Notes under the pieces: generated by a model
Told to the model about the DNA's origin: nothing
The model's input: the letters and a program-made list of their open reading frames with translations, nothing else
Databases searched by the model: none
IMG/VR virus record: IMGVR_UViG_3300031957_002643
Coordinates: 1-64,000 of that record
DNA length: 64,000 nucleotides
Reading direction: 5' to 3' (one strand)
Shown here: positions 20,172 through 37,448 of the stretch, in pieces
Position numbering within the stretch: the stretch's first letter is position 1
How the letters are laid out: the number at the start of each line of letters is the position of its first letter
Program-made: the position numbers and the translations under genes

Positions 20172-20314
20172 TGTTGACGCTACTCAAGATGTATACCATT
20201 ACGCCCGTGGTTGAATTCACAACTAAGGTTGGATATCCGCTACTTGCGGTTCTAACTATGATTGCTACGTTTGATGCGATCATGTTATTTGTAATTTTGG
20301 AGAATATGAAATGA
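20171..20314 (+). CDS. small membrane protein (47 aa, not in the ORF track)
   Basis: MLTLLKMY...YPLLAVLTMIATFDAIMLFVILENMK*; tiles the gap. Confidence 0.45.
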   Translation: MLTLLKMYTITPVVEFTTKVGYPLLAVLTMIATFDAIMLFVILENMK

Positions 20315-20598
20315 ATTTTAAGCCCCTACACCATCGCCTGTTGGTAAAACCTGATGCTCCGGTTGAACAAACCAAAGGTGGAGTTCTTTTACCGGATGAC
20401 TTGATCAAGCCTGTAAACCGTGGTACTGTGGTTGCTGTTGGTACAGGCCGTATCGATAACAAGGGTAATCGTCACTCCCTTGATTTTGAAGTCGGTGAAC
20501 GTGTTCTGGTTGCCAAATGGGGCGAACATGAATTCGTTTTCGAAGACACAAAGCACTATTTGATCGATGAATCAGATATCGTTGGAAGAGAAAAATGA
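20311..20598 (+). CDS. groES: co-chaperonin GroES
   Basis: FKPLHHRLLVK, TKGGVLLP mobile loop, GTVVAVGTG, ESDIVG. Confidence 0.93.
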   Translation: MNFKPLHHRLLVKPDAPVEQTKGGVLLPDDLIKPVNRGTVVAVGTGRIDNKGNRHSLDFEVGERVLVAKWGEHEFVFEDTKHYLIDESDIVGREK

Positions 20599-21679: not shown

Positions 21680-21813
21680 AATCCTTGAAAGAGGTTTTCA
21701 GTGTCGAGGACGTATTTCTGGAAGCGGATGCCTCAGATACCGCTGACAAGATCATCCAAGCAATCAAGGAAAAGGGCTATGAACTCAGACTCGGTGGGAA
21801 GAAGTCCGATTGA
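21631..21813 (+). CDS. hypothetical protein
   Basis: GAGG RBS. Confidence 0.55.
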   Translation: MRAEEIFKDIAKEEIMKSLKEVFSVEDVFLEADASDTADKIIQAIKEKGYELRLGGKKSD

Positions 21814-22153
21814 CGATATTATGGATGAGGAACTTTTCCGAGTTCAACACTTGTATCCTGATGAGCGTATTGATGCAGCCGTCAAGGAAATCAATCGTAT
21901 CCTTCACAAGTACAATGTTTACATGAATGATGGCGGATTTGATTATTTTCAGGTCCACAGTGATGAGTTCAGTGCCATTATTAAGGACGATGAGATGGTG
22001 GACCCACGTCCTCATCTTTTTCCTGATGATGTCATTACTCGCAATTACATTGCACTTGCCAATGCAGAAGCACTCATGGTTCCTGTCTCCAAGGAACATG
22101 CTGAACGAATGATTCTTTTGGCAGAGGCATATTTGAAGACCAATGATAAATGA
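21779..22153 (+). CDS. hypothetical protein
   Basis: Start adjusted. Confidence 0.6.
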   Translation: MNSDSVGRSPIDDIMDEELFRVQHLYPDERIDAAVKEINRILHKYNVYMNDGGFDYFQVHSDEFSAIIKDDEMVDPRPHLFPDDVITRNYIALANAEALMVPVSKEHAERMILLAEAYLKTNDK

Positions 22154-22577
22154 TCTGTTACATTTCGATCTAACCGGTACGCATATTCTCAACGAACGCA
22201 AGTTATTCGAAAAGTATTTCAAGCGCATTCAAGAATATATAACCAAGAAGAACCCCGGCAAATACCCTCCGTATCCCTATCCGTTCGAATTAACGAGTAC
22301 TGCGCTTCGTTATATATCAAGAAAACGTGGATTGGTTTGGGAACAATCCGTGGGACTAATTGATTGTAGTACGGATACCTATAGAGAGAAAAATACTTTC
22401 TATGTCCGTATCGAATTAGTATTGTTCTACAATAAAGGTGGATGCCGTCTGGGCCTGCCGATAAATTGGGCATATCCGGCAACACTGTGGCTTGAAGCGT
22501 TCCAACACTGGATGGACACGAAATATGCTAGAGGGGACGACGATCCGCCTGACTTTATTTCTTATATCGAAAAATAA
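22143..22577 (+). CDS. E18-family paralog 1
   Basis: MINDLLHFDLTGTHILNE. Confidence 0.7.
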   Translation: MINDLLHFDLTGTHILNERKLFEKYFKRIQEYITKKNPGKYPPYPYPFELTSTALRYISRKRGLVWEQSVGLIDCSTDTYREKNTFYVRIELVLFYNKGGCRLGLPINWAYPATLWLEAFQHWMDTKYARGDDDPPDFISYIEK

Positions 22578-22585
22578 AACGTCCT

Positions 22586-23002
22586 ATGATTAACGACCTG
22601 ATCTTTTTTGATAATAAAAGTGTACTCACCACGGGAGAGTGCGACCTTTTTTCTTCTTATGTTGGAACTATCGTAGACTACATTAATGCTAATTTTGAAT
22701 TGATCGACACGCCCGTCTATTGGATCAATCCTCTTTTCAGAAATACATCGTTAAGAGATTTCGAAGTAAATCCGAATGTCAACTGTGAATATACAACTAC
22801 ATTCAATCGACAGACAATGGAATTTCGCGTTACGGTCGCTGGACATTATGCAGATGTCATGATTGGAATATACGTCCCATTCAATTCCCAAGTAGGAATA
22901 AACAAATGGGCTATTGCATTTTCGCGCTGGGTGGAAGAATATGCTGAAGACCAAAGTGCCAAGCCACCAGACTTTGCATACTTCATGGATATGGAAGACT
23001 AA
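22586..23002 (+). CDS. E18-family paralog 2
   Basis: MINDLIFFDNKSVLTTGE. Confidence 0.7.
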   Translation: MINDLIFFDNKSVLTTGECDLFSSYVGTIVDYINANFELIDTPVYWINPLFRNTSLRDFEVNPNVNCEYTTTFNRQTMEFRVTVAGHYADVMIGIYVPFNSQVGINKWAIAFSRWVEEYAEDQSAKPPDFAYFMDMED

Positions 23003-23385
23003 TGATTCGCGATCATATTATAGACAATGCATTGGAAGCTCTTAATTTCAGTGAGGGCAGTCTTATTGCGCGTCTTACCAGACAGTATATGAAATCAAAA
23101 GGATTGGTGGTAGATAATATACAATTAAGAGACTATTTTAGGAATAGCTACGAATTCCTTGCAGATCGGGATGAGGTTCGCATTGATCATGTTCGTTTGG
23201 AGTTAGAAACCGACGAGGATAACGACCATAAAGTTTCTATGTACAGTTTTCAATTTGTAGTACACAGTGAATTTGCCTCTGTTGATTTCACCTTTTACGG
23301 GTTTCAGATTCCAGATAGTATCACAGCAGAGATTGATAGATTGTTGGATGGATATAAGTTGAAGGAGTGGTTAGGTGCTTCGTGA
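23002..23385 (+). CDS. E18-family paralog 3
   Basis: MIRDHIIDNALEALNFSE. Confidence 0.7.
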   Translation: MIRDHIIDNALEALNFSEGSLIARLTRQYMKSKGLVVDNIQLRDYFRNSYEFLADRDEVRIDHVRLELETDEDNDHKVSMYSFQFVVHSEFASVDFTFYGFQIPDSITAEIDRLLDGYKLKEWLGAS

Positions 23386-23749
23386 CATCATAACTTCAGA
23401 AGCGTTTGATTCGTGTGTTCAAGAAGAACGCAAACTCGTCTTCTCACATATCATTTCGATCATGGAAAATTATGGACAATACTCATCCACCTTCTTGTCC
23501 TATCAAACCCATGAACAAGGAGGAACCGAATTCACTCCGAAGATCAGAACAGATTCCAACAATTCGCACATAGATATCAGTCTCACGATGCATTATAGCA
23601 GCGTGACGCATACTTTTAGATGGTATTACGATCTGTCTCCAAAAGAAATAAAAAAGATAGAGTGCGAACTAAAGAACTGGTTCGAAGATTATTACAAGAT
23701 CAAACCCAAATTGCTCAAGAACTTTTTTCCAGAGTTGTACATTTCATGA
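23375..23749 (+). CDS. E18-family paralog 4
   Basis: MLRDIITSEAFDSCVQEE. Confidence 0.7.
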   Translation: MLRDIITSEAFDSCVQEERKLVFSHIISIMENYGQYSSTFLSYQTHEQGGTEFTPKIRTDSNNSHIDISLTMHYSSVTHTFRWYYDLSPKEIKKIECELKNWFEDYYKIKPKLLKNFFPELYIS

Positions 23750-24174
23750 TTAGAGATTTAATACATGATTATGCTTGGGATAATGTTTTCTTATCCGAAA
23801 GAGAAACGATCAAGATGAACATTGCATTCGTCTTGAACGAAGCTCATTTCTACGTGCATGACATCCACCTTCGAGGCGCGCTAAATTCCATGTTCGATCC
23901 ATGCGAAATTGAAATCGATAGTTTGGAAGTTGATGATAGTGAGACTTACGAACATAAAATAGTAGGACGCGCGACACCGCACGTTGTCGTAGACAGAAAG
24001 CTTATTTTGAAGTTTACAGTGTTCGGGTATTACAATAATCTTAACTTCACAACCATAGCGGTAGCATCACAAGTTGATATCGAAAAGATTATGGATCAGA
24101 ATGGTAATGTCATCCTGTTCGATACAGTAGATGTCAATGATTGGCTAAATCCAAAGATGGTTCCTGATGATTAA
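23746..24174 (+). CDS. E18-family paralog 5
   Basis: MIRDLIHDYAWDNVFLSE. Confidence 0.7.
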   Translation: MIRDLIHDYAWDNVFLSERETIKMNIAFVLNEAHFYVHDIHLRGALNSMFDPCEIEIDSLEVDDSETYEHKIVGRATPHVVVDRKLILKFTVFGYYNNLNFTTIAVASQVDIEKIMDQNGNVILFDTVDVNDWLNPKMVPDD

Positions 24175-24643
24175 TGAACACATCATATCGACGAGCAAGA
24201 GAGATGTTCGTAAACGCGAAATCAAGCGTGTCAAGAAGGCTTTTGCTGAAAGACTGGTAGCCAATGGGTTTGGTAAGAACTGCACGCACAAGTGCCGTGT
24301 ATGGGTGCTGAATGAGTATTGCTTTTCGCCAATGTTCAGTGCAGAAGATACATATACGATAGTCCCACGTGATGGGAGTGGTCCTTTGTATGTTTTTACA
24401 AAGGACTATATAGCAATGACCCATTATGGTTGTGTACAAATTCATTATTCTCGTAAATCCAACAAGGAGTTTCGAAAATTTGATGATCATTGGAACAAAG
24501 CCAAACATGTAGATATCACGTTCAATTTCTACTATAATGGTTATCATTTCACAGCGATGCTTATTAATAAGGATTATAAGAGCCTTCTGAAGTTTGCCAG
24601 ACAGGTATCTCGTTCCGCACATGAGGCTATATTTGATGATTAA
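24167..24643 (+). CDS. E18-family paralog 6
   Basis: MINEHIISTSKRDVRKRE. Confidence 0.7.
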   Translation: MINEHIISTSKRDVRKREIKRVKKAFAERLVANGFGKNCTHKCRVWVLNEYCFSPMFSAEDTYTIVPRDGSGPLYVFTKDYIAMTHYGCVQIHYSRKSNKEFRKFDDHWNKAKHVDITFNFYYNGYHFTAMLINKDYKSLLKFARQVSRSAHEAIFDD

Positions 24644-24995
24644 TGATAAAATAATCGAAGAGACTACCATCAAGGGTGCCAAAAAAGAATTAAATGCTAT
24701 CCGAAACATTTGTGTAAAAGTACTTGACAGGTGGTTAAGTCTGGAAGAATCCAGAAGTCTATTGTCTAAAGACTTCTTACATTTGAACAAGAAGTATTTG
24801 AAAATACCACATGATAATGATCCACGAATAAGCATAGACTACTTCGATTTTGACATCACGATTGTGGTATTTGGAATCTTTTATACCAAGTCATGGGAGT
24901 TCCGGGTGCCATTAGACAATCGTGACCATGTTCATGAAATTGCTAACATGCTTACGGCGGAACTGGATTTGTTTTACGAGACATTCGATGCTTAA
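24636..24995 (+). CDS. E18-family paralog 7
   Basis: MINDKIIEETTIKGAKKE. Confidence 0.7.
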   Translation: MINDKIIEETTIKGAKKELNAIRNICVKVLDRWLSLEESRSLLSKDFLHLNKKYLKIPHDNDPRISIDYFDFDITIVVFGIFYTKSWEFRVPLDNRDHVHEIANMLTAELDLFYETFDA

Positions 24996-25419
24996 TGATC
25001 TCATTCAATATGATTACCATATTGTCTGTGGTAATAAGGAACTTCACTATTTTGATCAGTATTTCAATACGATTCGGAAGAAACTGTATTCATCACAGTT
25101 TGATGCGCCGCCCGGACATATCACTAGAAGAATGAATATCAATTTTAATTATACAGCACATATTCAAAAACAGCCTGTTATTAGATGGAACAACATTAAC
25201 AAAAGCACAATGATGAGATTAGAAATAATTGGCTTCTTCTCGGTTGTTAGTGTAGAATTTCATTACTGTCCGCTGCGGTACCAGTTCTTCAAAACGTGGT
25301 CCGAAATGTTTGACGTATGGTTCAATAATGAATACAATGGTATGGCTAACGTTTCACCACCATCTATCGAAGATGTATTGAATGAAAGACCTGTTCTGCG
25401 GAGCATCTTTGATGATTAG
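24988..25419 (+). CDS. E18-family paralog 8
   Basis: MLNDLIQYDYHIVCGNKE. Confidence 0.7.
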   Translation: MLNDLIQYDYHIVCGNKELHYFDQYFNTIRKKLYSSQFDAPPGHITRRMNINFNYTAHIQKQPVIRWNNINKSTMMRLEIIGFFSVVSVEFHYCPLRYQFFKTWSEMFDVWFNNEYNGMANVSPPSIEDVLNERPVLRSIFDD

Positions 25420-25864
25420 AAATACCGTCATTGCCGATCATAAAGCTAGTCTTGTTCGAAACGAATTCATCTTTATTGGTAACATTCTGCAAGAGATGAA
25501 AGCCAAGGCTTATGGTGGGGCTATGAAAGAACTCGCCGGGGATACGTACAATTACTATGACATCGGAAAGCCAGCCACTTCAATAATGGATTTGCGCGTC
25601 ACGGTAGTCGATAACATGTCCTCAGAACTATATTCGGTCACCGCTTATGGATACTATCTCCCAATGTCTCTCGATATAGAATATACTTCTCATAATTATT
25701 TGATCAGAAGTGAACGATATCCTAATAGAGACTTTGTTCGTGATCTGATAGATGTGTTTGAAACTTGGTTCGAAATCGAGTATGCCAGTGGCAAAGATAC
25801 AAAGCCTGACTTTAGTGAATGCATGAAGCGTGAATACAAAAGACGGTTAGAAACGTTCAGATGA
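25412..25864 (+). CDS. E18-family paralog 9
   Basis: MIRNTVIADHKASLVRNE. Confidence 0.7.
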   Translation: MIRNTVIADHKASLVRNEFIFIGNILQEMKAKAYGGAMKELAGDTYNYYDIGKPATSIMDLRVTVVDNMSSELYSVTAYGYYLPMSLDIEYTSHNYLIRSERYPNRDFVRDLIDVFETWFEIEYASGKDTKPDFSECMKREYKRRLETFR

Positions 25865-26223
25865 TCAACGATCTGGTATATGATGACTATGCTATGTTAA
25901 ATGCCCGCGAAGAACATCTCGTCCTTCTGCGAGACTTAGCTGATTTCATTCACGAACAGGGCTATCGTAACAGATCAATAGACATCTTCGAAAGATATAA
26001 AGATTTAGACTATGGCTTATCGTCATACTGGCGCGGTAAAATACTATGGCCGCATGTGTCATTTCTTACACATACAAATGACACCGTAATTACTGTTGAT
26101 ATCAATGGTTTCTTTGTTGGTCAGTACTATCATATACCGTTTGATGGATGGCCAGAATTTGCAGTTGTGAATTTGATGCGCGACCTAAACCATTATTTCA
26201 GAGACTACTTCAAACCTAGATAG
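25861..26223 (+). CDS. E18-family paralog 10
   Basis: MINDLVYDDYAMLNAREE. Confidence 0.7.
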   Translation: MINDLVYDDYAMLNAREEHLVLLRDLADFIHEQGYRNRSIDIFERYKDLDYGLSSYWRGKILWPHVSFLTHTNDTVITVDINGFFVGQYYHIPFDGWPEFAVVNLMRDLNHYFRDYFKPR

Positions 26224-26228
26224 TACTA

Positions 26229-26588
26229 ATGCTTATTGACATCATATCCGACAGCCGATGGAGACAGGAAGCCCGCAATGAATATATGCAGGTTGTGCGT
26301 GATGTTGCTGCCTTTTTGTATGATCATGGCTGGATCGATGATATGGACAAGATAATCAAAGCGTGTGAAACTCTTCCATTGACACGCTATTGCAATATCA
26401 TAAAAACACCCACTCCATATATTGTATTCTCCTCACAGGATTGGTATTTGCAGGCAAGTTATATTGGTCACTTTGGCTGTCGTCGTTTTACAATTGGTAC
26501 TGGTCCTGCCGCACATGAGGGACTAACGTTAGCGAAAACGGCAGACCATGCCAACGAATTCTTCAAGGATTATTTCGATGCTGTTTGA
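26229..26588 (+). CDS. E18-family paralog 11
   Basis: MLIDIISDSRWRQEARNE. Confidence 0.7.
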   Translation: MLIDIISDSRWRQEARNEYMQVVRDVAAFLYDHGWIDDMDKIIKACETLPLTRYCNIIKTPTPYIVFSSQDWYLQASYIGHFGCRRFTIGTGPAAHEGLTLAKTADHANEFFKDYFDAV

Positions 26589-26943
26589 TGTCATAAGCAA
26601 AACTCGCTGGGAACATGCCGCACATGAAGAGTATTTGAAAATCTATCATGATGTCGTCGAATACCTATATTCAACGGGTTGGATTGATCGGAAAATCAGA
26701 ACAGAAATCGAAGAAGCATGCTTTCGTGATCCATTCCAAATGTGTATAAATCATGGCACTTATATTATTAGTCCCCACATCAACATAAGCGTTCAAAGTT
26801 GGCGACTTGGTGTTGATTATGTCGGAGAGTATGATTGTCGTAAGTTCTCTATGGATATAAAGAATAATCTTGATGAACGTGGATTTGAAATATTAGCAAG
26901 TGAAGCGAACGAGTTCTTCAAGGATTACTTCGATGATTGTTGA
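26578..26943 (+). CDS. E18-family paralog 12
   Basis: MLFDVISKTRWEHAAHEE. Confidence 0.7.
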   Translation: MLFDVISKTRWEHAAHEEYLKIYHDVVEYLYSTGWIDRKIRTEIEEACFRDPFQMCINHGTYIISPHINISVQSWRLGVDYVGEYDCRKFSMDIKNNLDERGFEILASEANEFFKDYFDDC

Positions 26944-27289
26944 CAAGCTCGTATTTTGCGCACTTAAAGACATTGCGAAAGCTGAGAACGATGCGTTTCT
27001 GCAAGTAGTAGAAAACGTCATTAACGAACATGTGTCACCACCGATTGATATTTTTGAAAAACTACATGATCGTGAAAAATCGTTTGAAGTGCAATCAGCA
27101 AAAATGGGTTTTATCAAAATGCAAAAGCATGCATCATTTGAGTACGAAAGGGCGAGCAAATCGATTTTCATACAACACCGGGGAGAATGGTGTATTTTCT
27201 TTGAATACCTTTACTTAAAGACGCGAAATGCTCACAAAATACAAGAAGCGGTTATCGCCCTGAACAAACATTTTGCCCACTATGATTAA
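26933..27289 (+). CDS. E18-family paralog 13
   Basis: MIVDKLVFCALKDIAKAE. Confidence 0.7.
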   Translation: MIVDKLVFCALKDIAKAENDAFLQVVENVINEHVSPPIDIFEKLHDREKSFEVQSAKMGFIKMQKHASFEYERASKSIFIQHRGEWCIFFEYLYLKTRNAHKIQEAVIALNKHFAHYD

Positions 27290-27659
27290 TCACGTGATCA
27301 TAAATCACCATCTGGAAGATGTTGGCCGTGAAGAATTCCATAACATTCTTCAGGATATTGATACTATTGTCAATCAGCATGGTTGGGCGGGTTTTGACGT
27401 AATGGGGCAATTTAAACACTGTATTGTGCATTTTACTTGTGATGATTATCAATGTGCTATTCATAGAAGACGTGTAAGCATTAGCATGGTTAAATCGCCC
27501 CGTGCCAACTATAATGGTATCCGTATTATCATTCGGGGAGACTATTCTCATAAAGGCATGTTGCTTGTTTTTGATGATTGGCCACGGAAATACGTTGCGC
27601 GCGTAAAAGAGCGGTTAGCCGAACATTTTGATGGTATTTTTGGAAAGCTCAATGATTAA
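27282..27659 (+). CDS. E18-family paralog 14
   Basis: MINHVIINHHLEDVGREE. Confidence 0.7.
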   Translation: MINHVIINHHLEDVGREEFHNILQDIDTIVNQHGWAGFDVMGQFKHCIVHFTCDDYQCAIHRRRVSISMVKSPRANYNGIRIIIRGDYSHKGMLLVFDDWPRKYVARVKERLAEHFDGIFGKLND

Positions 27660-28014
27660 TTCTTGCATTAGATTAAATCACTTGAGAGAAGCATCACGCG
27701 AAGAATATTTTGCGTTCATGTCATATCTTTCGGACTATATTGCAACATACGGATATGAACCATACAATCTTACAGGACATAAAAGCGGTTTTCGAACCGT
27801 TTCCATGGACATATACAATAATCAGGACCGGGGCTATATCCGGGTTTCATACTATCATAATGGTAGTGGAGTAGTTGTTCGTGTTGTTGGTGATTATTTC
27901 AGACTGGAAATCTCAATACGACCGCTAAATTGGCCACCTGAAGAAATCTTCAAACTGTATGAAGAGTTGCAACGAGATGAGTTTGTGAGATATTTTCAAA
28001 ATCATGATCAATGA
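27652..28014 (+). CDS. E18-family paralog 15
   Basis: MINSCIRLNHLREASREE. Confidence 0.7.
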   Translation: MINSCIRLNHLREASREEYFAFMSYLSDYIATYGYEPYNLTGHKSGFRTVSMDIYNNQDRGYIRVSYYHNGSGVVVRVVGDYFRLEISIRPLNWPPEEIFKLYEELQRDEFVRYFQNHDQ

Positions 28015-28360
28015 CCATATCATACGACTCCACTTGGGTTGCGAAGGTCGTGAGGAATACAACAAGTTCCTGCGAGACGTGACCAACTTCATATCCGAGC
28101 ATGGATATGAACCATATGATCTATACACTCAAGAACAGGGGAAAGGTTGCTCAATACATAGTTATTCATATAGATTTTTCGAACGCCCATGTATTGACTT
28201 TCACTACTATTCGGACCATAGTGGTATTAACCTTCGTGTGAATGGTGAATACTTCTACAAAACCATAAGTCTGGATTTATCGGACTGGCCCAAAGGCGAA
28301 GCGTTCAAACTGTACAATCTAATGGTTGATCGATTAGAGAATTATTTCCATGATCCGTGA
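28004..28360 (+). CDS. E18-family paralog 16
   Basis: MINDHIIRLHLGCEGREE. Confidence 0.7.
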   Translation: MINDHIIRLHLGCEGREEYNKFLRDVTNFISEHGYEPYDLYTQEQGKGCSIHSYSYRFFERPCIDFHYYSDHSGINLRVNGEYFYKTISLDLSDWPKGEAFKLYNLMVDRLENYFHDP

Positions 28361-28700
28361 CAGTATTGCATATGAACGTGGTCAGGAGATCGCATACGCT
28401 GAAGCGGATTATATTGCTAAGCGAATATGGAGCATTGTTGAAAAACATATTGGGCAAGATGCTTATTGCCTTGATTTGATGTCTCATATGACAGATGATA
28501 TGATCTACAACCGGTCGCCAATTAGACAGCTTTCATTTGCGAAACTATCAGGCTATCCCGACCAGATTGCTTGTGGGATTCGTGGCTTCCATATCAGTAC
28601 GGATTTCTTTCTTTGTTTGGAAGTCCATAATGATGTGACTAGAGATGTTTTGCATGATCTTCAAGTATTTGCTGCTGAAGATGACTTTGAGACTGTATGA
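28350..28700 (+). CDS. E18-family paralog 17
   Basis: MIRDSIAYERGQEIAYAE. Confidence 0.7.
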   Translation: MIRDSIAYERGQEIAYAEADYIAKRIWSIVEKHIGQDAYCLDLMSHMTDDMIYNRSPIRQLSFAKLSGYPDQIACGIRGFHISTDFFLCLEVHNDVTRDVLHDLQVFAAEDDFETV

Positions 28701-29077
28701 TGCTGAGTGATCACCTCATAGATGATAATGTCGAGGTCTTGAACCGCGAAGAGGCAAGCTTCATCGTGGGTTCACTGGCAAAAATCTTCAAGAAGTATTT
28801 TGATCCAGTATCAGTGGATGATTTTTGCGAAGACCTGTATACCAAGTTGACCAAGAGATTCAGATGGATTGATGATCCCTCTGGCCAAGAAATGAGAATA
28901 TCGTATAATATTCCCATAAGTGATGCCTATGAGAGATTTCCAATCTATGTATGTGGACAGACTATAGCATATGAGTTCTATGTTTATACAACTGGAAAAC
29001 CTTCGACAGAGGTATGCATGATGGTCTATGAGTTAGAGCGGTTTGCAGAAGAAGATTTTGGAAAATACTATCAATGA
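28700..29077 (+). CDS. E18-family paralog 18
   Basis: MLSDHLIDDNVEVLNREE (second ATG of tandem MM). Confidence 0.7.
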   Translation: MLSDHLIDDNVEVLNREEASFIVGSLAKIFKKYFDPVSVDDFCEDLYTKLTKRFRWIDDPSGQEMRISYNIPISDAYERFPIYVCGQTIAYEFYVYTTGKPSTEVCMMVYELERFAEEDFGKYYQ

Positions 29078-29457
29078 TTTCTGACAGCATAAAACTCGAT
29101 TACCTTAGATACTTGAATCAATTGGAAGCCGGTTTTCTTGTAGATTCTCTATCCGATATTTTTCATGGTGTTTTTGGTAATGACAGTGTAACTCGATTTT
29201 GTCTGTCGTGTTATGATGACTTTACAGAAAAGCCCGTTCTCTCTGCTGATGGGTTCCACATAGTACATGAGATTGTAGAGATGGAACAGAAGGGTGGATA
29301 TGGGTATTCGGCAGAATTGCATGTCAAATTTTTCTGTCTCACTTTCATTGATCAGTTTTCTATTGATGTCACACATGTCAAAAGTGATGTACTGAGAGAG
29401 ATGAAACTGAAGCTGAACCGCCTCTTTAATGAAGAATATTTGGAATTCATGGGATGA
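29074..29457 (+). CDS. E18-family paralog 19
   Basis: MISDSIKLDYLRYLNQLE. Confidence 0.7.
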   Translation: MISDSIKLDYLRYLNQLEAGFLVDSLSDIFHGVFGNDSVTRFCLSCYDDFTEKPVLSADGFHIVHEIVEMEQKGGYGYSAELHVKFFCLTFIDQFSIDVTHVKSDVLREMKLKLNRLFNEEYLEFMG

Positions 29458-29810
29458 TACAAGACACTATCAATGAACTCCACCTTGAACGTATGAACAA
29501 GGTAGAAGCGGATTATATCATAAGCCTGTTGAAGCCTATTTTATGCGAATTCTACGACCGCAGGAAAGCGATTACGCTTTGTGATTATGTTCATGGCAAA
29601 TGCATACAGTATCGTTCACTGGCACGATCAAGCTTCAATCATCGTATTGATATAGTTGAATGCAGTGGCGATGTCCTACTTGTTTACTTTCATTGCGTGA
29701 CGTTTTATAGTAGAATGAAACTCAGCACAACAATGAAGCATAGAGAGAGAAGTAGACTAATTTGTTATTTGCATGATCTCAATGCACAATACTTGGAGTT
29801 CATCGGATGA
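29454..29810 (+). CDS. E18-family paralog 20
   Basis: MIQDTINELHLERMNKVE. Confidence 0.7.
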   Translation: MIQDTINELHLERMNKVEADYIISLLKPILCEFYDRRKAITLCDYVHGKCIQYRSLARSSFNHRIDIVECSGDVLLVYFHCVTFYSRMKLSTTMKHRERSRLICYLHDLNAQYLEFIG

Positions 29811-30166
29811 TTATTCATAGGATCAATAGTGATTATCTCGATCACATCAATAAAAACGAATCCGAGTTCCTTTCAGGGCAGTTCGAGGCTATTCTGTCTC
29901 ATCATGTATCAATAGACAATATAGAGAAATCTCTTTCCGGTTTTAAGCGGGTGGTGCACAAGTACAGAAACTTTATGAATGTTGAGCCGTCTATGAACTG
30001 TTATGTGGATTACGATTACTTCAACATTACAATTTCTATCGTTGGTGAAACATTCAATTGTGCATTCAAGGTGTTTGTGGATGCCAATTTGGATAGCACT
30101 CTAGCATTATTGCGAAATCTTAATGATTTTGAAAATGAGACATTCAAAGAGTACTACAATGCTTAG
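29807..30166 (+). CDS. E18-family paralog 21
   Basis: MIIHRINSDYLDHINKNE. Confidence 0.7.
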   Translation: MIIHRINSDYLDHINKNESEFLSGQFEAILSHHVSIDNIEKSLSGFKRVVHKYRNFMNVEPSMNCYVDYDYFNITISIVGETFNCAFKVFVDANLDSTLALLRNLNDFENETFKEYYNA

Positions 30167-30515
30167 AGATATGATTAAAGACAACCACATCCGATCAATT
30201 AATGATGATGAAGTCAAATTCTTTACCAATCATTTTCGATCTATTTTGGTCAATCACTTGAGCAATAACGAGAGTTCATTTTTGCTTTTTAAGTTGAAAA
30301 TAATTTTATGCACAATTTCCCATTTCGGAGAAATTGAACCACTAATGTCATGCACACGTGGTGAGGACAAGCCTAATTCGATACGGATAATAGTGACGGG
30401 TGAAACGTTTAATAGCGGCATTCATCTAGACATTACTGATGTATGTGATAAGAATAAGCTGATGGAAGAACTGGTTGAATTTTCTAAAGGCAAATTCAAA
30501 GAGTATTACTCATGA
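30159..30515 (+). CDS. E18-family paralog 22
   Basis: MLRDMIKDNHIRSINDDE. Confidence 0.7.
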   Translation: MLRDMIKDNHIRSINDDEVKFFTNHFRSILVNHLSNNESSFLLFKLKIILCTISHFGEIEPLMSCTRGEDKPNSIRIIVTGETFNSGIHLDITDVCDKNKLMEELVEFSKGKFKEYYS

Positions 30516-30874
30516 TCACTAATTTGCTATACTATGATGCTCTTAGTAACGTATATCACGATGAAAGAGCTTTCGTTCTTTGGAATATTGCGGAAATCAT
30601 AACCAAACACAAAGGTAAACTTGCCGCACAGATGTTCATTAACACTTATTTGTATGGTCGATATGCTACTAGACAACTTATGACACACGACGAAATCAGT
30701 TTGTGTTTTGTATGGCCAAATATTCACAAAGATTACATTATTGCAATCATTCATTGTGAGGTTTATCGTACTCGTATTGAAATCGGTACCGAATATATGT
30801 CTAATCCTGACGACTTTATTGTAGACCTTTGGGAATTCCAACGCAATGAATTCAACAAGAGATATAATAAATGA
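30512..30874 (+). CDS. E18-family paralog 23
   Basis: MITNLLYYDALSNVYHDE. Confidence 0.7.
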   Translation: MITNLLYYDALSNVYHDERAFVLWNIAEIITKHKGKLAAQMFINTYLYGRYATRQLMTHDEISLCFVWPNIHKDYIIAIIHCEVYRTRIEIGTEYMSNPDDFIVDLWEFQRNEFNKRYNK

Positions 30875-31242
30875 TCATCCAAAAAATCATACTTAATCAT
30901 GTAGAAGATGTCGGGAAGAAGGAGATGAGATTTATCGCTGATTGGTTTGGTCACATGATTGAAGAACATACGCAGAAATCAGTAAAAACGAGTGATAGTA
31001 TTTTCAAAGAAATCGAAAGATATAACCGTAGTTGGTACGATCTTAAGAGAACTCCAAAAATAAAGATCGAAGAAAGTCTTTTGAATACGTATGCTATTAT
31101 GATTAGTATTCATAGTCCATACTTTGTCTCAAGTTTTTACATAACTTTGGATATGTTTGGTGATTGTGATTACGATGCGTTCATGGATGAGGTGAACCGG
31201 TTCGCTGCAATCGACTATAAGGATTATCATGATGCTTTGTGA
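30871..31242 (+). CDS. E18-family paralog 24
   Basis: MIIQKIILNHVEDVGKKE. Confidence 0.7.
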   Translation: MIIQKIILNHVEDVGKKEMRFIADWFGHMIEEHTQKSVKTSDSIFKEIERYNRSWYDLKRTPKIKIEESLLNTYAIMISIHSPYFVSSFYITLDMFGDCDYDAFMDEVNRFAAIDYKDYHDAL

Positions 31243-31597
31243 TTTGGTGAGACGAGAACACATCGTATCTTTGGCATATGATGAAGCAGCACATATGGCC
31301 AGAAAGTTGGTGCTCATAGACAACAAGTATAAGACACGTAAAGATTTGACGTTTGATGATGTCATGGAATCCATGGAGGGGTGGGATAGTTTGTGTTTCG
31401 ATTCCTACGTCATACCAGAAATAACTATTATTAAAGTAGGCGGAACAAGTATTAATGTCAGATACAGAGGCAATCTGATTCGAGGAGATATATTCGTCAA
31501 CTCCTGTCTTCTTGGGTATTCCAAGTATAAGGAATTGATGTGGGAGCTTATTGCGTTTTCAGGTGATGCATTCACGGATTATCACAATGCTTCGTAA
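31232..31597 (+). CDS. E18-family paralog 25
   Basis: MLCDLVRREHIVSLAYDE (second ATG of tandem MM). Confidence 0.7.
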   Translation: MLCDLVRREHIVSLAYDEAAHMARKLVLIDNKYKTRKDLTFDDVMESMEGWDSLCFDSYVIPEITIIKVGGTSINVRYRGNLIRGDIFVNSCLLGYSKYKELMWELIAFSGDAFTDYHNAS

Positions 31598-31955
31598 CGT
31601 CATCGCAAATCAGTATATTCGCACTATGGTAATGGACGAAGTACGTTTTGTGTCAGAACATATATGTGAATTAGTGAACAAAGTGTTATCTAATCACAAA
31701 TATAATTTGGATGTGAATTTCACAGTAGACACCTTTTTAGATCAAGGCCATATTGGTATATTTGGTCTGAACCCTAATTTGACTATATCGCAGTCTGCAC
31801 GACAACAACTATACATCAAATTGAGCGGTCCCGTTTTTATTTCTGAGGTCAAATGGAACCTTGGTGTTCTCACCGAGAATGAGTTCAATAAGACTATCAG
31901 AAAGCTCAATATATTTGCCGCGAATGAATTCAGATATTATCACAATGCTTCGTAA
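31587..31955 (+). CDS. E18-family paralog 26
   Basis: MLRNVIANQYIRTMVMDE. Confidence 0.7.
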   Translation: MLRNVIANQYIRTMVMDEVRFVSEHICELVNKVLSNHKYNLDVNFTVDTFLDQGHIGIFGLNPNLTISQSARQQLYIKLSGPVFISEVKWNLGVLTENEFNKTIRKLNIFAANEFRYYHNAS

Positions 31956-32316
31956 TGTCATCATACATGAATACGCCAAGCATATGGCACAGAGAGAATT
32001 AATATTCGTATTCACAATCATTGCCCAAATCATGGACAAGTATTTTTATGACCCTATGGACAGGGTAGACGTGGAATTCGCTGTAACGAAAATGATGGAC
32101 AAGGGCAGTTTCGGCCTTCGTGACATCCAACCACGGTTGAGTATTATACATCGCAAGACTGACAAATTCATTATCGGAATAGATAGTCCATTCATACAGT
32201 CGCACACTAATTTTTGGTGCCCTAGTCTAACCATAGAAGAAGCGAACAGTATGAATGAAGAATTGCAAACCTTCGCTGATAATGAGTTCCTAGATTACCA
32301 CGGACTTGTATCTTGA
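31945..32316 (+). CDS. E18-family paralog 27
   Basis: MLRNVIIHEYAKHMAQRE. Confidence 0.7.
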   Translation: MLRNVIIHEYAKHMAQRELIFVFTIIAQIMDKYFYDPMDRVDVEFAVTKMMDKGSFGLRDIQPRLSIIHRKTDKFIIGIDSPFIQSHTNFWCPSLTIEEANSMNEELQTFADNEFLDYHGLVS

Positions 32317-32344: not shown

Positions 32345-33067
32345 ATGGTCCACTCTCTACGCAAATACTTGATTGAAAACGAACACCAACAAGGAACATA
32401 CGAATCCTATGTGGCGTATTTCGAGAACTTGGACTACACCAAGAAATCCACCATTGAAAAACTAAAACTTCCATTCCCACCTGCCAACCAAAGAGAAACT
32501 ATGTTTAACAAAGATGGGTATGAAATGGATGGAGGGTATGAAATTTTTGATAATAGTATCATCAGGAAGCCATACATCACCATGAAGATTATTCCAAAGG
32601 ACAAAATCCGATATGGCATAATGCTTGAATTCAATATCAAAACTCACAAATTGGACCAGTGTATTCTTCTTAATCCAAAACGTTCATATGCAACACAAAC
32701 AAATATTAAAGATTGCGCGGTTCAATACCATGCTGGCAATTTTTACTTCAACAGTAATGGTCAACTGGTTCCTAATATTGGATATCACATTTTACAAACA
32801 CTGGTCAGGGACTACCAGCGAAAAACATTTTATAGTGTGCTGAAGAACCGAGAAGACCATATCAACAATAATATTCTTCCTATGATTCAAGGTTTGATCG
32901 ACAATGAGTATTTGTCATTGAAACAGGCCAAGTATTATATGAATGAGATTGCCGAAGAATCTGCAACATATTGGAAACACCAAGACCCATCTCATGGTGA
33001 AACGTTTGAAGAAGCGATTGAAGACTTCCGTAGATTGATGAGGGAGGCTACTCGTGCGCTTACGTAG
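32345..33067 (+). CDS. putative virion-internal protein (MVHSLRKYLIE)
   Basis: Start adjusted; paralog of the next two ORFs (GTYE.Y..YF..LD...KS...L.LPFPPAN). Confidence 0.7.
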   Translation: MVHSLRKYLIENEHQQGTYESYVAYFENLDYTKKSTIEKLKLPFPPANQRETMFNKDGYEMDGGYEIFDNSIIRKPYITMKIIPKDKIRYGIMLEFNIKTHKLDQCILLNPKRSYATQTNIKDCAVQYHAGNFYFNSNGQLVPNIGYHILQTLVRDYQRKTFYSVLKNREDHINNNILPMIQGLIDNEYLSLKQAKYYMNEIAEESATYWKHQDPSHGETFEEAIEDFRRLMREATRALT

Positions 33068-33743
33068 CATTGTGGAGGGTGAGGCACCCGAAGGCACTCT
33101 TGAAGCCTACACGGCGTATTTTAACGGGTTGGACCTCCGTAAGAAATCCGTGTTGGATAATATCAGATTACCGTTCCCACCAGCTAATGAAAGTGAAGCC
33201 ACTTATCGGCTTCACGGTCGATTGGGACCATTTTATGAAGTTGATGATTCAACTTATCGATTGCGGCTTAATCTCGAATACCAAGACATGGATCGCATCT
33301 ATATGGAGTTTTATGAGGACAGTGATCATCCTTATATTTTCAAATTCAAAGAAAAGGTGGATGGTACTGCGAAAGAAGTTCGTTGGTTCGAGAATGGTGA
33401 ACGCCAATATCGTTTCAAATCAACGAGACATATGGAGCACAGCGTTATCAACCACTTAGAACATATGCTTGATTATTGGATTGAGATTAGTCCCAATAAT
33501 GGAGGCATTGAATATGTGATGAAGGGGCAAGCATTTTTGGTGAAGTATGCATCGGAACTCATGTCTCTCAAGGAAAATGAATTTATAGATAGTCGTACTG
33601 CTAGTAGATGCATTGAAGCTGCTATCGATAAAGTAGAAGACGCATTGAATAGATTAGTGAATGATGATGTACTTGAGAAGAATGCTCGTCATGTGAAGGA
33701 ACTCAAAGCAACGTATGAGAAGGTGCGTCATGCGGTTGCGTAA
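33054..33743 (+). CDS. putative virion-internal protein (MRLRSIVE)
   Basis: GGAGG RBS; paralog family. Confidence 0.7.
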   Translation: MRLRSIVEGEAPEGTLEAYTAYFNGLDLRKKSVLDNIRLPFPPANESEATYRLHGRLGPFYEVDDSTYRLRLNLEYQDMDRIYMEFYEDSDHPYIFKFKEKVDGTAKEVRWFENGERQYRFKSTRHMEHSVINHLEHMLDYWIEISPNNGGIEYVMKGQAFLVKYASELMSLKENEFIDSRTASRCIEAAIDKVEDALNRLVNDDVLEKNARHVKELKATYEKVRHAVA

Positions 33744-34527
33744 TATTGTAGAAGCTGAGCAGAAGCGTGGTTCCTTTGAAGACTTTTATGAGTACTTCAC
33801 CAGTATGGATTTGACACATAAATCTGTGCTGGAAAGTCTTCGTCTTCCCTTTTCTACCGCCAACGATAGTGAGATCATCTATAAACAAGATGGCACACGA
33901 ACCGATAGTTACTTCCACTATGGAAATATTATACGTTTTGTATACAGGAAACTCACATCTCCTCATTATGATCAAATTTTAATGGAGTTCGAATTAGACG
34001 GCAGTCTTAGAAAAATCGATTTCAGAAAACATGATTCTCATGGTTATACGTCATATCGGGCAGGTGATATAATGGCTGTGATGTTCGATACACGTGACGG
34101 GCGGCCTATGGTTACTATAAAAAATACAACAGGTAATTCCTCAGATGATTACTTTATGAATGAAATTCGTACTAAGGGCATTGATGATTTTGTTAGCTAC
34201 GTTTATCCCAGCTTCAGAGAAACCGAAAACAATTATGCAGACACACCAGTATGGTTAGAAAGATCACAGGAATTCTTGAGCCGATTACTGGATGCCGGGT
34301 ATATCACAAAAGAAGATGCAATTAATGCGATTGATCAGATTCGTGCGAAGGTTGATCAAATAGAAGACCTATTCATTAATAAAATAGGTCTTGATGATTT
34401 TGGTATCTATTCAACTAATAGTGGAAAGTATCAAAAGGAAATTGAAGACGATCCGGTAGCTCATTTTAACAGGCTCAAAGCTGAAATCGACGCCAAGTTC
34501 AAGGAGGTGTATGATGCGTTTGTCTAA
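33730..34527 (+). CDS. putative virion-internal protein (MRLRNIVE)
   Basis: Start adjusted; paralog family. Confidence 0.7.
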   Translation: MRLRNIVEAEQKRGSFEDFYEYFTSMDLTHKSVLESLRLPFSTANDSEIIYKQDGTRTDSYFHYGNIIRFVYRKLTSPHYDQILMEFELDGSLRKIDFRKHDSHGYTSYRAGDIMAVMFDTRDGRPMVTIKNTTGNSSDDYFMNEIRTKGIDDFVSYVYPSFRETENNYADTPVWLERSQEFLSRLLDAGYITKEDAINAIDQIRAKVDQIEDLFINKIGLDDFGIYSTNSGKYQKEIEDDPVAHFNRLKAEIDAKFKEVYDAFV

Positions 34528-35239
34528 TATCATTGAAGCAACAGGACTTACCTTTGAACAACTTGTTGACGTGTTCCGCAATGCGAATATCAAAACGGTT
34601 GAAGACATCCAAAAATTCAGGTTGAAGAAAAGCATGATCCCAAATCAGAGTGTTTACCTCTTTGATAAAAATGGACGAAATAAAGGTGAGTATGCCGCTC
34701 GTACTTTTAACTTTTATGTAGGTGATGAGGAGGCCGAGAACAATATTCTTGAAGTCTACACGAATGCGGAAGAAGGGTTCAATAAATTTGATTACGATTT
34801 GATCACTGATCGGTTACTTCGTGCTGCTAGGTTTAAGCCCTATACGACAGAGCTTGGAGATATCGTTATTGGTTCGGATCATAAAACTATTACAGATCAG
34901 CCTGTAAGCGTTGATTGGTTCCATGGTGAAATGAGATGTCATTGGCCACTAATAGGTACAAACGGACATGACAGAACCATACCATTTGTGTCCTTTGTCA
35001 GACACAATTTTAATACAATTTATGAAAAGAATGATGATTGGGAACAGGCATTCGATTATGTCACCAATGCCTGTAAGAACAATAAAGAATGGGGATTCAT
35101 TGACGGGGATAGGGCTAAAGCTGTTGTTGAAGTCGTAACGGAAATGATGATCAGATATATGAGACAGACAAACGTGGACAGGAAGATCATTGGTGGTGCT
35201 GAACGCAAGAGACAGGAGATGATCGATGAAATCTCTTAA
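34514..35239 (+). CDS. putative virion-internal protein (MRLSNIIE)
   Basis: AGGAGG RBS; LFDKNGR.KG shared with the next two ORFs. Confidence 0.7.
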   Translation: MRLSNIIEATGLTFEQLVDVFRNANIKTVEDIQKFRLKKSMIPNQSVYLFDKNGRNKGEYAARTFNFYVGDEEAENNILEVYTNAEEGFNKFDYDLITDRLLRAARFKPYTTELGDIVIGSDHKTITDQPVSVDWFHGEMRCHWPLIGTNGHDRTIPFVSFVRHNFNTIYEKNDDWEQAFDYVTNACKNNKEWGFIDGDRAKAVVEVVTEMMIRYMRQTNVDRKIIGGAERKRQEMIDEIS

Positions 35240-37445: not shown

Positions 37446-37448
37446 AAG

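What the first reader, a model, noticed from the sequence alone, without database searches (positions are those of the whole stretch)
22143..32316. 27 tandem divergent paralogs with a fixed-length N-terminal segment and an invariant Glu18
Seen: 10.2 kb filled with 27 ORFs of ~115-160 aa, with no intervening genes. With starts set at the overlapping ATG/GTG, every one begins M-[IL]-x-(mostly D/N)-x-[ILV] and has Glu at exactly position 18 (27/27 by hand count; two need the second Met of an MM). Many also share a late 'I.G..F' strand and a C-terminal F..Y[FYH]; the middles look highly diverged. Inference: a conserved 18-residue docking helix on a variable domain, i.e. a repertoire of interchangeable specificity subunits that plug into one partner (for example anti-defence or host-targeting adaptors). 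I do not recognise the family.
Basis: partly seen in the sequence, partly recalled or inferred. Interest (0 to 1): 0.88.

Follow-up and report, generated by a model that had tools for sequence, protein, structure and literature searches.

The report
27-gene orphan paralog array, jumbo phage
A giant uncultivated T4-like phage carries 27 back-to-back, very diverged copies of one small protein with no relatives or structural match anywhere else, probably a fast-evolving set of host-interaction proteins, but their function is unproven.

Summary
Window 22143-32316 holds exactly 27 same-strand paralogs (116-158 aa). In 24 of 26 junctions the genes overlap by 1, 4, 8 or 11 nt. All 27 have Glu at residue 18 and start M-[IL]-x-(D/N)-x-[ILV].

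The genome is a 335.5-kb metagenomic jumbo phage of the T4 superfamily, related to the Rak2/Munch group. A family profile searched against 1.84 billion protein representatives found only these 27. Pfam, PHROGs, NCBIfam, PADLOC and PDB sequences gave nothing.

AlphaFold2 gives a confident fold (pLDDT 90.8): a 32-residue N-terminal helix, a three-stranded sheet and a C-terminal helix. Foldseek found no significant neighbour for it.

Residues 1-18 are not a separate docking peptide. They are the first half of one continuous helix, and E18 lies on its core-facing hydrophobic stripe.

I tested a T4-style capsid-targeting propeptide cleaved after E18. The phage encodes a Peptidase_S77 protease, but the required hydrophobic P3 residue is present in only 3 of 27 members.

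A related phage (MCP 93% identical) has about 27-32 small tandem genes in the same slot. They are unrecognisably diverged and lack E18.

Best reading: an ancient, lineage-specific multigene family of diversified small binding proteins in a hypervariable accessory locus. Function is inferred, not shown.

The parts
22143..32316 (+). Whole array: 27 tandem paralogs in one translationally coupled block
   Evidence: Junction tally: overlaps of 11 nt (8), 8 nt (7), 4 nt (7), 1 nt (2), plus two gaps of 5 and 8 nt. Promoter-like sites are not enriched.
22143..22577 (+). g01, 144 aa, most divergent member
   Evidence: E18. Leave-one-out E=1.2, but 42 bits and 26% identity to g02. HMM 55.8 bits.
22586..23002 (+). 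g02, 138 aa
   Evidence: E18. Leave-one-out E=6.3e-5.
23002..23385 (+). g03, 127 aa
   Evidence: E18. Leave-one-out E=1.1e-3.
23375..23749 (+). g04, 124 aa, GTG start
   Evidence: E18. Leave-one-out E=7.3e-8.
23746..24174 (+). g05, 142 aa
   Evidence: E18. Leave-one-out E=8.4e-3.
24167..24643 (+). g06, 158 aa, basic, weakest member
   Evidence: E18 and an MINEHI start. Leave-one-out E=1.4 at Z=10,000. HMM 52.7 bits.
24636..24995 (+). g07, 119 aa
   Evidence: E18. Leave-one-out E=5.4e-5.
24988..25419 (+). g08, 143 aa
   Evidence: E18. Leave-one-out E=1.8e-4.
25412..25864 (+). g09, 150 aa
   Evidence: E18. Leave-one-out E=2.7e-3.
25861..26223 (+). g10, 120 aa
   Evidence: E18. Leave-one-out E=3e-10.
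26229..26588 (+). g11, 119 aa
   Evidence: E18. Closest pair with g12, 80 bits.
26578..26943 (+). g12, 121 aa
   Evidence: E18. Leave-one-out E=2.8e-10.
26933..27289 (+). g13, 118 aa
   Evidence: E18. Leave-one-out E=1.3e-3.
27282..27659 (+). g14, 125 aa
   Evidence: E18. Leave-one-out E=4.7e-11.
27652..28014 (+). g15, 120 aa
   Evidence: E18. 70 bits to g16.
28004..28360 (+). g16, 118 aa, the member modelled with high confidence
   Evidence: AF2 pLDDT 90.8, pTM 0.82. Elements: H2-33, H40-45, E63-68, E74-80, E84-91, H97-111.
28350..28700 (+). g17, 116 aa
   Evidence: E18. Leave-one-out E=6.7e-6.
28700..29077 (+). g18, 125 aa (second Met of an MM)
   Evidence: E18 with the second Met. Leave-one-out E=5.4e-12.
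29074..29457 (+). g19, 127 aa
   Evidence: E18. Leave-one-out E=7.7e-6.
29454..29810 (+). g20, 118 aa
   Evidence: E18. Leave-one-out E=2.9e-4.
29807..30166 (+). g21, 119 aa
   Evidence: E18. Leave-one-out E=2.2e-10.
30159..30515 (+). g22, 118 aa
   Evidence: E18. Leave-one-out E=1.8e-16.
30512..30874 (+). g23, 120 aa
   Evidence: E18. Leave-one-out E=1e-6.
30871..31242 (+). g24, 123 aa
   Evidence: E18. Leave-one-out E=5.2e-13.
31232..31597 (+). g25, 121 aa (second Met of an MM)
   Evidence: E18 with the second Met. Leave-one-out E=9e-7.
31587..31955 (+). g26, 122 aa
   Evidence: E18. 64 bits to g27.
31945..32316 (+). g27, 123 aa (internal Met; the database call is 7 aa longer)
   Evidence: E18. 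Start discussed. Leave-one-out E=1.1e-10.

Best explanation
The segment is a real operon of 27 ancient tandem duplicates of one small cytoplasmic-type protein. It lies in the plastic accessory region of an uncultivated T4-superfamily jumbo phage.

Shown:
- All 27 copies keep one compact fold: a long N-terminal helix packed with a C-terminal helix on a three-stranded antiparallel sheet.
- The conserved positions are the hydrophobic core, a Pro before the first strand, a hairpin Gly and a single invariant polar residue, Glu18, on the core-facing side of helix 1.
- Variation is concentrated in the loops (especially after residue 37) and on the solvent face of the sheet.
- The genes are chained by stop-start overlaps and weak Shine-Dalgarno sequences embedded in the preceding gene's C-terminal codons.
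- A related phage keeps an array of similar size, gene length and junction style in exactly the same slot, with sequences diverged beyond recognition.

Inferred:
- The whole set is made together from one transcript.
- The locus is a duplication-and-divergence ('accordion') repertoire of small binding proteins that act on variable host targets, for example in counter-defence or host takeover.
- E18 is a structural or functional keystone of this particular family's fold, not the end of a detachable peptide.
For: - Paralogy and exact count.
- Neighbouring genes are the most similar (mean 26 bits at distance 1, about 12 bits at distance 4 or more).
- The best-conserved DNA is at the gene junctions.
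- Protein-level selection on E18, with both Glu codons used.
- Confident common fold. Conservation map showing core conserved, loops and sheet face variable, and no indel in residues 1-32.
- E18 on the hydrophobic stripe.
- Coupling: 24 of 26 junctions overlap. Shine-Dalgarno duplex energy averages -3.4 against -1.6 kcal/mol in controls. Promoter-like sites are not enriched.
- Accessory location: SbcC and the baseplate/portal/protease/MCP block are about 3 kb apart in Salmonella phage Munch and about 48 kb apart here.
- Orphan status.
- Syntenic array in a relative. It has no significant similarity but a weak collective signal (z about 3.4 and 4.9).
- Precedent: about 10% of RaK2 proteins are paralogues, many of them orphans (PMC3622015). 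Phage G carries a roughly 35-copy expansion (PMC7824862).
Against: - Nothing links any member to a target, a defence system or a host protein. The binder-repertoire function rests on analogy.
- The host is unknown and the phage is uncultured.
- Only one member has a confident model. The g01 model was poor (pLDDT 60.2).
- I could not inspect model coordinates, so E18's burial is inferred from helical periodicity only.
- No invariant intramolecular partner for E18 exists in the family. That leaves room for an external partner or a catalytic role.
- Flanking orthologues in the relative are themselves only 46-66% identical. The unrecognisable divergence of the arrays therefore does not by itself prove accelerated evolution.
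Confidence: 0.45

Rival explanations
1. Packaged internal (ejected) head proteins. Residues 1-18 would be a capsid-targeting propeptide that docks to the scaffolding core and is removed by the phage's gp21-type prohead protease cutting after the invariant Glu18, as in the T4 internal proteins.
For: - The phage encodes a full T4-type head module, including Peptidase_S77.
- T4 internal-protein propeptides are 10-19 residues long, cleavage is strictly after Glu, and Asp blocks processing (PMC9026906). This would explain a fixed 18-residue length and a Glu that is never Asp.
- T-even internal proteins are a highly diverse set that share only the targeting sequence (PMC3012670).
- The array abuts a block of genes whose leaders do fit the protease motif.
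Against: - The T4 rule needs L/I at P3. Here P3 (residue 16) is L/I/V/M in only 3 of 27 members and mostly R/K/Q/H.
- The same phage's likely MCP maturation site (M-L-x-E, invariant with phage Munch), its scaffold (25 such sites) and array 2 (9 of 10) do obey the rule.
- None of the 27 has the phiKZ-type S/A/G at P3.
- E18 lies mid-helix on the hydrophobic face of a confidently modelled continuous helix.
- The syntenic array in the relative has no fixed Glu.
Confidence: 0.12
2. Helix 1 with E18 is a shared adaptor surface through which interchangeable variable subunits plug into one common partner, for example a phage or host hub protein with a conserved basic residue.
For: - E18 is invariant, yet no other polar position is conserved above about 70% that could be its intramolecular partner.
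- I2 and I6 are hydrophobic in 27 of 27 members, on a different face from the 11-29 stripe. A 32-residue helix is longer than the sheet it packs on, so part of it may be exposed.
- Co-translation of all 27 would suit competition for one partner.
Against: - There is no module boundary at residue 18. The helix and its hydrophobic stripe are continuous.
- No candidate partner was identified.
- The N-terminal M-[IL]-x-[DN] motif is partly imposed by embedded stop codons.
- The relative's array has different invariants (His9) and no E18.
Confidence: 0.2
3. A family of small enzymes with Glu18 as the catalytic residue and variable substrate pockets.
For: - A single strictly invariant carboxylate on the inner face of a helix.
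- Both Glu codons are used.
Against: - No second conserved polar residue, no metal- or nucleotide-binding motif and no conserved Cys or His.
- No fold or sequence match to any enzyme.
- 27 co-expressed isoenzymes of 120 aa would be unusual.
Confidence: 0.05
4. Non-functional or decaying duplicates, or a gene-calling artefact.
For: The family is an orphan and its members are highly diverged.
Against: - 27 intact reading frames in a row, with conserved core periodicity and a confident fold.
- Preserved stop-start junctions.
- Sequences are identical on 4-5 independent contigs.
- An independent gene caller agrees.
Confidence: 0.02

Closest known systems
T4 / T-even internal protein (IP) genes with a capsid-targeting sequence (PMC3012670, PMC9026906)
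   Same: - A T4-superfamily phage with a gp21-family protease.
- Small, very divergent proteins that share only a short N-terminal segment of fixed length ending in Glu.
- Location in a plastic region of the genome.
- A presumed counter-defence logic.
   Different: - The L/I-x-E cleavage motif is missing in 24 of 27 members.
- The conserved N-terminus is part of a structural helix.
- There are 27 copies of one fold rather than a few unrelated folds.
- There is no sequence relation to the T4 proteins.
- The neighbouring array 2 fits the T4 model much better.
Lineage-specific paralog expansions in jumbo phages: about 10% of RaK2 proteins are paralogues, many of them orphans (PMC3622015); about 35 zinc-ribbon copies in Bacillus phage G (PMC7824862)
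   Same: - Many paralogues of a small domain confined to one jumbo-phage lineage.
- Members are more like each other than like anything in the databases.
- Function unknown.
   Different: - Here all copies sit in a single uninterrupted, translationally coupled array.
- The fold has no recognisable relative, whereas the phage G expansion is of a known zinc-ribbon fold.
Multigene families and 'genomic accordions' of large eukaryotic DNA viruses (poxvirus host-range genes, ASFV MGF families). This comparison is from general knowledge and was not tested here.
   Same: - Tandem duplication and divergence of small accessory genes.
- Turnover between related genomes.
- Location outside the conserved core.
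   Different: - The host domain is different.
- No evidence of recent copy-number change: the closest pair scores only about 80 bits and there is no near-identical DNA.
- No functional data.
Small alpha-beta-alpha sandwiches (Roadblock/LC7, MP1-p14, longin) and the dsRBD alpha-beta3-alpha fold
   Same: Generic architecture: an N-terminal and a C-terminal helix on an antiparallel sheet. These folds recur among the weak Foldseek hits.
   Different: - All hits are insignificant (E>=0.26, query-normalised TM<=0.30 against the PDB).
- Helix 1 is about three times longer than in a dsRBD.
- No sequence signal.

Membership tests
T4-type capsid-targeted internal proteins | Phage encodes a gp21-family (Peptidase_S77) prohead protease and a T4-type scaffold and MCP | tested here: met
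   Portal_T4, Peptidase_S77, a 360-aa scaffold-position protein and a Gp23-type MCP lie just past the window end.
T4-type capsid-targeted internal proteins | N-terminal propeptide of 10-19 residues ending in Glu (PMC9026906) | tested here: met
   Glu is at residue 18 in 27 of 27 members, and it is never Asp.
T4-type capsid-targeted internal proteins | Cleavage motif L/I-X-E (hydrophobic P3) | tested here: not met
   P3 is L/I/V/M in 3 of 27 members. Array 2 scores 9 of 10, and the MCP and scaffold conform.
T4-type capsid-targeted internal proteins | Protein is present in virions and is N-terminally processed | not testable with these tools
   The phage is an uncultured metagenomic contig, and no proteome is available.
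phiKZ-type inner-body / ejection protein paralogs | Cleavage at S/A(/G)-X-E by a diverged gp21 homologue | tested here: not met
   None of the 27 has S, A or G at residue 16. The phage is not phiKZ-like.
Lineage-specific tandem multigene family | Three or more same-strand adjacent paralogues, with neighbours most similar to each other | tested here: met
   27 adjacent members. Mean similarity is 26 bits at distance 1 and about 12 bits at distance 4 or more.
Lineage-specific tandem multigene family | Restricted phyletic distribution | tested here: met
   The profile search of 1.84 billion representatives returned only the 27. Clusters are single-sequence, on 4-5 near-identical contigs.
Lineage-specific tandem multigene family | Located in a variable accessory region, with turnover between relatives | tested here: met
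   A 48-kb insertion relative to phage Munch. The syntenic array in the relative with 93%-identical MCP is not recognisably similar.
Any Pfam / PHROG / NCBIfam / PADLOC family | A significant profile match | tested here: not met
   No family matched more than one member, and nothing scored below E=0.0025.
Known folds (PDB, BFVD) | Foldseek E<=0.001 or TM>=0.5 | tested here: not met
   With the pLDDT 90.8 model, the best PDB hit had E=0.26 and query-normalised TM<=0.30. The best BFVD hit had E=0.087 and TM<=0.37.

The most novel reading that the evidence does not exclude
The whole 20-kb block (array 1, array 2, the 554-aa protein, the 165-aa protein and NUDIX) is a giant cargo locus for proteins delivered with the DNA.
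- The downstream genes would use a T4-like N-terminal tag cleaved at [LIV]-x-E.
- Array 1 would be a second, mechanistically new class. It might be loaded through its invariant helix and Glu without canonical cleavage, or it might act as a set of dedicated adaptors or chaperones for the tagged cargo.

This would give a jumbo phage a repertoire of 40 or more injectable proteins that turns over between close relatives.
Probability: 0.12. Interest if true: 0.8.

Novelty: new member of a known kind. Interest (0 to 1): 0.55.

Why it matters
If these proteins are a diversified host-interaction repertoire, the locus would be one of the largest single-family expansions seen in a phage. It would be a compact source of 27 (plus about 27-32 in the sister phage) natural variants on one small, apparently new scaffold. 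That is useful for finding new counter-defence or host-takeover activities and for studying how phage accessory genes diversify by duplication.

The conserved 'array slot' between GroES and the head module, with complete sequence turnover between two related phages, offers a defined place to look for such repertoires in other jumbo phages.

The adjacent leader-tagged genes may extend the T4 capsid-targeting principle to a jumbo-phage lineage, including an enzyme (NUDIX).

None of this changes established knowledge yet. The function is unproven and the phage is uncultured.

Tried and rejected
1. Near-identity search of the array against GenBank phages: no match. tblastn of single members of array 1 and array 2: no match.
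Single-protein scans found only the source contig.
3. The search for homologous proteins with the alignment recovered only 4 of the 27 proteins themselves. The word index is insensitive for so diverse a family.
4. The first structure job used the most divergent member (g01) and gave pLDDT 60.
5. The T4 late-promoter box TATAAATA is not used in this phage: 1 site in 64 kb and none in the head module. The sigma-70 scan was at chance level. Expression timing is therefore undetermined.
6. hhalign of array 1 against array 2 found them unrelated. hhalign of array 1 against the relative's array gave probability below 1%.
7. A microdiversity or dN/dS test between two strains of the relative was impossible because the loci are identical.
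8. The 124-aa gene just upstream (21779-22153) shares the 11-nt overlap style but is not a family member (E=3.5).
9. A lysozyme or transglycosylase idea (a catalytic Glu in an N-terminal helix) and a RelE/ParE-like idea were considered and dropped. Foldseek gave no such hits.
10. One contig-walk look-up failed because a TTG start is translated as Leu.

Full report
**1. What is there**

Window 22143-32316 contains 27 consecutive + strand genes of 116-158 aa and nothing else.
- E18 uses both Glu codons (GAA 21, GAG 6), so the constraint acts on the protein.
- No member has an insertion or deletion in residues 1-32.
- An independent gene caller, whose calls are in the public protein collection, chose the same start in 24 of 27 genes. 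Two of the others differ by the first Met of an MM, and one was called 7 codons longer.
- The family is statistically real. Leave-one-out profiles recover 25 of 27 members at E<0.01 for Z=10,000. g01 is linked through g02, and g06 is the weakest.
- A six-frame scan of the window and its flanks gives exactly 27 hits at E<=5e-15, and then nothing better than E=0.3.
- Mean column identity is 18%, with M1 and E18 the only invariant columns.

**2. Gene organisation**
- 24 of 26 junctions overlap: by 11 nt (8 junctions), 8 nt (7), 4 nt (7) or 1 nt (2). The other two have gaps of 5 and 8 nt.
- The upstream stop codon therefore lies inside or abuts the first 11 nt of the next gene.
- The common start ATG-ATT-AAT-GAx carries stops in both other frames. 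Nucleotide 9, the third base of a variable codon, is T in 19 of 27 genes. Part of the 'M-[IL]-x-[DN]' motif is thus a nucleotide-level stop-start cassette.
- Overlaps of 8 or 11 nt make up 58% of array junctions, against 9% of 70 other same-strand junctions in these phages.
- Weak Shine-Dalgarno sequences are embedded in the previous gene's conserved C-terminal codons. Mean duplex energy is -3.4 against -1.6 kcal/mol in controls.
- The gene junctions are the best-conserved DNA in the array.
- Promoter-like sites are at chance level.
- I infer one polycistronic, translationally coupled unit.
- Neighbouring genes are the most similar, as expected for tandem duplication. Even the closest pair scores only about 80 bits, so the expansion is old.

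**3. Genome context**

The window is the first 64 kb of a 335,552-bp metagenomic contig.
- Identified genes include SbcD and SbcC, a GroES homologue, RNA ligase, a GMP-reductase/IMPDH-type enzyme, NUDIX and thymidylate synthase.
- Just past the window end lie T4_baseplate, Portal_T4, Peptidase_S77, a scaffold-position protein and a Gp23-type MCP.
- The nearest cultured relatives are Rak2/Munch/CBB-type jumbo phages, with SbcC about 28% and MCP 57% identical.
- In phage Munch, SbcC and the baseplate-portal-protease-MCP block are about 3 kb apart. Here they are about 48 kb apart, and the array lies in that accessory insertion.

**4. Is the family known?**

No.
- Pfam, PHROGs, NCBIfam and PADLOC give nothing.
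- A profile search against PDB sequences gives nothing.
- An exhaustive HMMER profile search of 1.84 billion representatives returned 27 proteins, all encoded by this window.
- The 90% clusters are single-sequence and occur only on 4-5 near-identical contigs of about 335 kb.

**5. Fold**
- With the 27-member alignment, AlphaFold2 models g16 at pLDDT 90.8 and pTM 0.82. The elements are helix 2-33, short helix 40-45, strands 63-68, 74-80 and 84-91, and helix 97-111.
- g01, the outlier, was modelled poorly (pLDDT 60.2) but with the same order of elements.
- Foldseek finds no significant neighbour in the PDB (best E=0.26, query-normalised TM<=0.30) or in BFVD (best E=0.087, TM<=0.37). Only generic Roadblock/longin/dsRBD-like hits recur.
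- Mapping the alignment on the model shows a conserved hydrophobic core in every element, Pro62, and Gly81 in the hairpin. Variability lies in the loops (194 inserted residues after position 37) and on the polar face of the sheet.

**6. What is E18?**
- Averaged hydrophobicity places E18 within about 20-30 degrees of the centre of the local hydrophobic stripe (positions 11, 14, 18, 22, 25/26, 29) of one continuous helix. It faces the core or an interface and does not end a module.
- No other polar position is conserved enough to be its fixed side-chain partner.
- It could hydrogen-bond to backbone, for example at the Gly81 turn, or to a partly conserved Tyr. It could also contact something external.
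- I could not read the model coordinates, so this remains inference.

**7. The propeptide hypothesis, tested**

T4 internal proteins share only an N-terminal capsid-targeting propeptide of 10-19 residues. The gp21 protease removes it after Glu at L/I-X-E, and Asp blocks processing (PMC9026906, PMC3012670).

This phage has a gp21 homologue. Several features indicate that the L/I-X-E rule holds in this phage:
- The protease keeps an L-I-E near its own N-terminus.
- The MCP has an M-L-x-E site that is invariant with phage Munch.
- The scaffold has 25 [LIVM]-x-E sites.

Array 1 fails the rule. Residue 16 is L/I/V/M in only 3 of 27 members, and never S, A or G. Together with E18's position in the helix, this lowers the propeptide idea to about 0.12.

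**8. Comparative evidence**
- IMG/VR holds a relative with an MCP 93% identical. Walking its contigs shows the same gene order: SbcC, small genes, GroES, 32 small tandem genes (96-161 aa, 13.3 kb, with the same 8- and 11-nt overlaps), leader-tagged genes, NUDIX, IMPDH, ThyA, DHFR, baseplate, portal, protease and MCP.
- About 27 of the relative's small genes share their own fixed start, M-[ILF]-x-x-[ILMF]-[IL]-x-x-His9, and have no fixed Glu.
- They are not detectably similar to the 27. The best family-HMM hit is E=0.014 at Z=32, phmmer and blastp find nothing, and hhalign probability is below 1%.
- Their mean score does exceed shuffled controls (z about 3.4, and 4.9 for the reciprocal search). 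Remote homology or a shared fold pattern is therefore possible.
- Flanking orthologues are 46-66% identical, so drift alone could erase similarity between small proteins.
- The slot is conserved while its content has turned over. The relative's array is also an orphan.

**9. Interpretation**

The identity of the object is secure (about 0.95 confidence): a real, ancient, translationally coupled, phage-lineage-specific multigene family with an apparently new small fold.

Its function is inferred. A conserved scaffold with variable surfaces, an accessory location and turnover between relatives together resemble diversified host-interaction repertoires. Comparable cases are the T-even internal proteins, jumbo-phage paralog families (PMC3622015, PMC7824862) and the multigene families of large DNA viruses (the last from general knowledge). 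I put this at 0.45.

The remainder is unassigned.

**10. Novelty and score**

Tandem orphan paralog families in jumbo phages are a known phenomenon. This is a new and unusually large, compact member of that kind, with no known fold relative and a conserved array slot. The lack of any functional handle, the single uncultured lineage and the unknown host limit the interest to about 0.55.

Noticed in passing
window 32345-39411 (10 genes), continuing through 39411-39812, 39812-41476, 41466-41963 and 41984-42484: A second, unrelated orphan array of 10 tandem paralogs (180-272 aa) directly follows array 1. Nine of the ten begin with a short leader (for example MRLRNIVE, MKSLKTYLVE) whose [LIV]-x-E ends at residue 8-11. 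The next genes (554 aa, 165 aa, NUDIX) carry similar leaders. This matches the T4 gp21 cleavage rule and the length and position of T4 capsid-targeting propeptides far better than array 1 does. Array 1 serves as an internal control: only 3 of 27 members have such a site ending at residues 6-12. These genes may be packaged or ejected proteins.
   Followed up: partly
L035:10169-19711 and L036:8828-19543 (relative phage): The relative has the same leader on at least 12 heterogeneous genes (MKLKEVVQ, MRLSDIIVE, MRLKHIITE, MKLEALFE and others), including a 295-aa NUDIX hydrolase (MKFDRLIE). About 7 of 12 end in [LIV]-x-E. Three have Q and one has D in place of E, so cleavage, if it occurs, would not be universal.
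   Followed up: partly
L038:5470-18777 (relative phage; contigs Ga0129324_10000068 and ENA k141_371680, 317 kb): 32 small tandem genes sit in the same slot as array 1. About 27 of them share M-[ILF]-x-x-[ILMF]-[IL]-x-x-His9. A sub-cluster (r16-r19) starts MFDAFY and ends RRCYD. No Pfam or PHROG match.
   Followed up: yes
window 38264-39812; L035/L036 leader-tagged genes: Several leader-tagged genes contain repeated 'H-R-x-D-G-P-A' units (DNA repeat family D1, 5 copies). These resemble MORN-like or YwqK-like repeats. Not checked against a profile.
   Followed up: no
contig about 66-67 kb (L004:6633-7859; L005:6694-7920): An IS605-family OrfB/TnpB gene (HTH_OrfB_IS605, OrfB_IS605, Cas12f1-like_TNB) lies between the accessory region and the baseplate gene. 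It is absent at the same place in the relative (L008), so it is a recent insertion in this phage.
   Followed up: partly
L005:17181-18401 compared with the rest of the genome: The MCP is 93% identical to the relative's, while SbcC, GroES, NUDIX, IMPDH and ThyA are only 46-66% identical. Either there is unusually strong constraint on the capsid protein or the head module was recently exchanged between lineages.
   Followed up: no
window 20311-20598: A phage-encoded GroES (Cpn10) homologue lies 1.5 kb upstream of the array. It is conserved at the same place in the relative. By analogy with T4 gp31 it probably serves capsid-protein folding.
   Followed up: no
L005:14735-15424: A 229-aa extremely acidic protein (long D/E runs) lies between the portal and the protease. 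It is probably a prohead core protein, and it carries several [LIVM]-x-E sites at both ends.
   Followed up: no
window 32345-41963: Array 2 junctions favour a 14-nt overlap (5 of 12). This is another unusual stop-start register and is specific to that block.
   Followed up: no
window 62735-63436 (- strand): A 234-aa protein has class II aminoacyl-tRNA-synthetase core hits (tRNA-synt_2b, and a weak tRNA-synt_2d hit). No tRNA genes were found in the 64-kb window.
   Followed up: no
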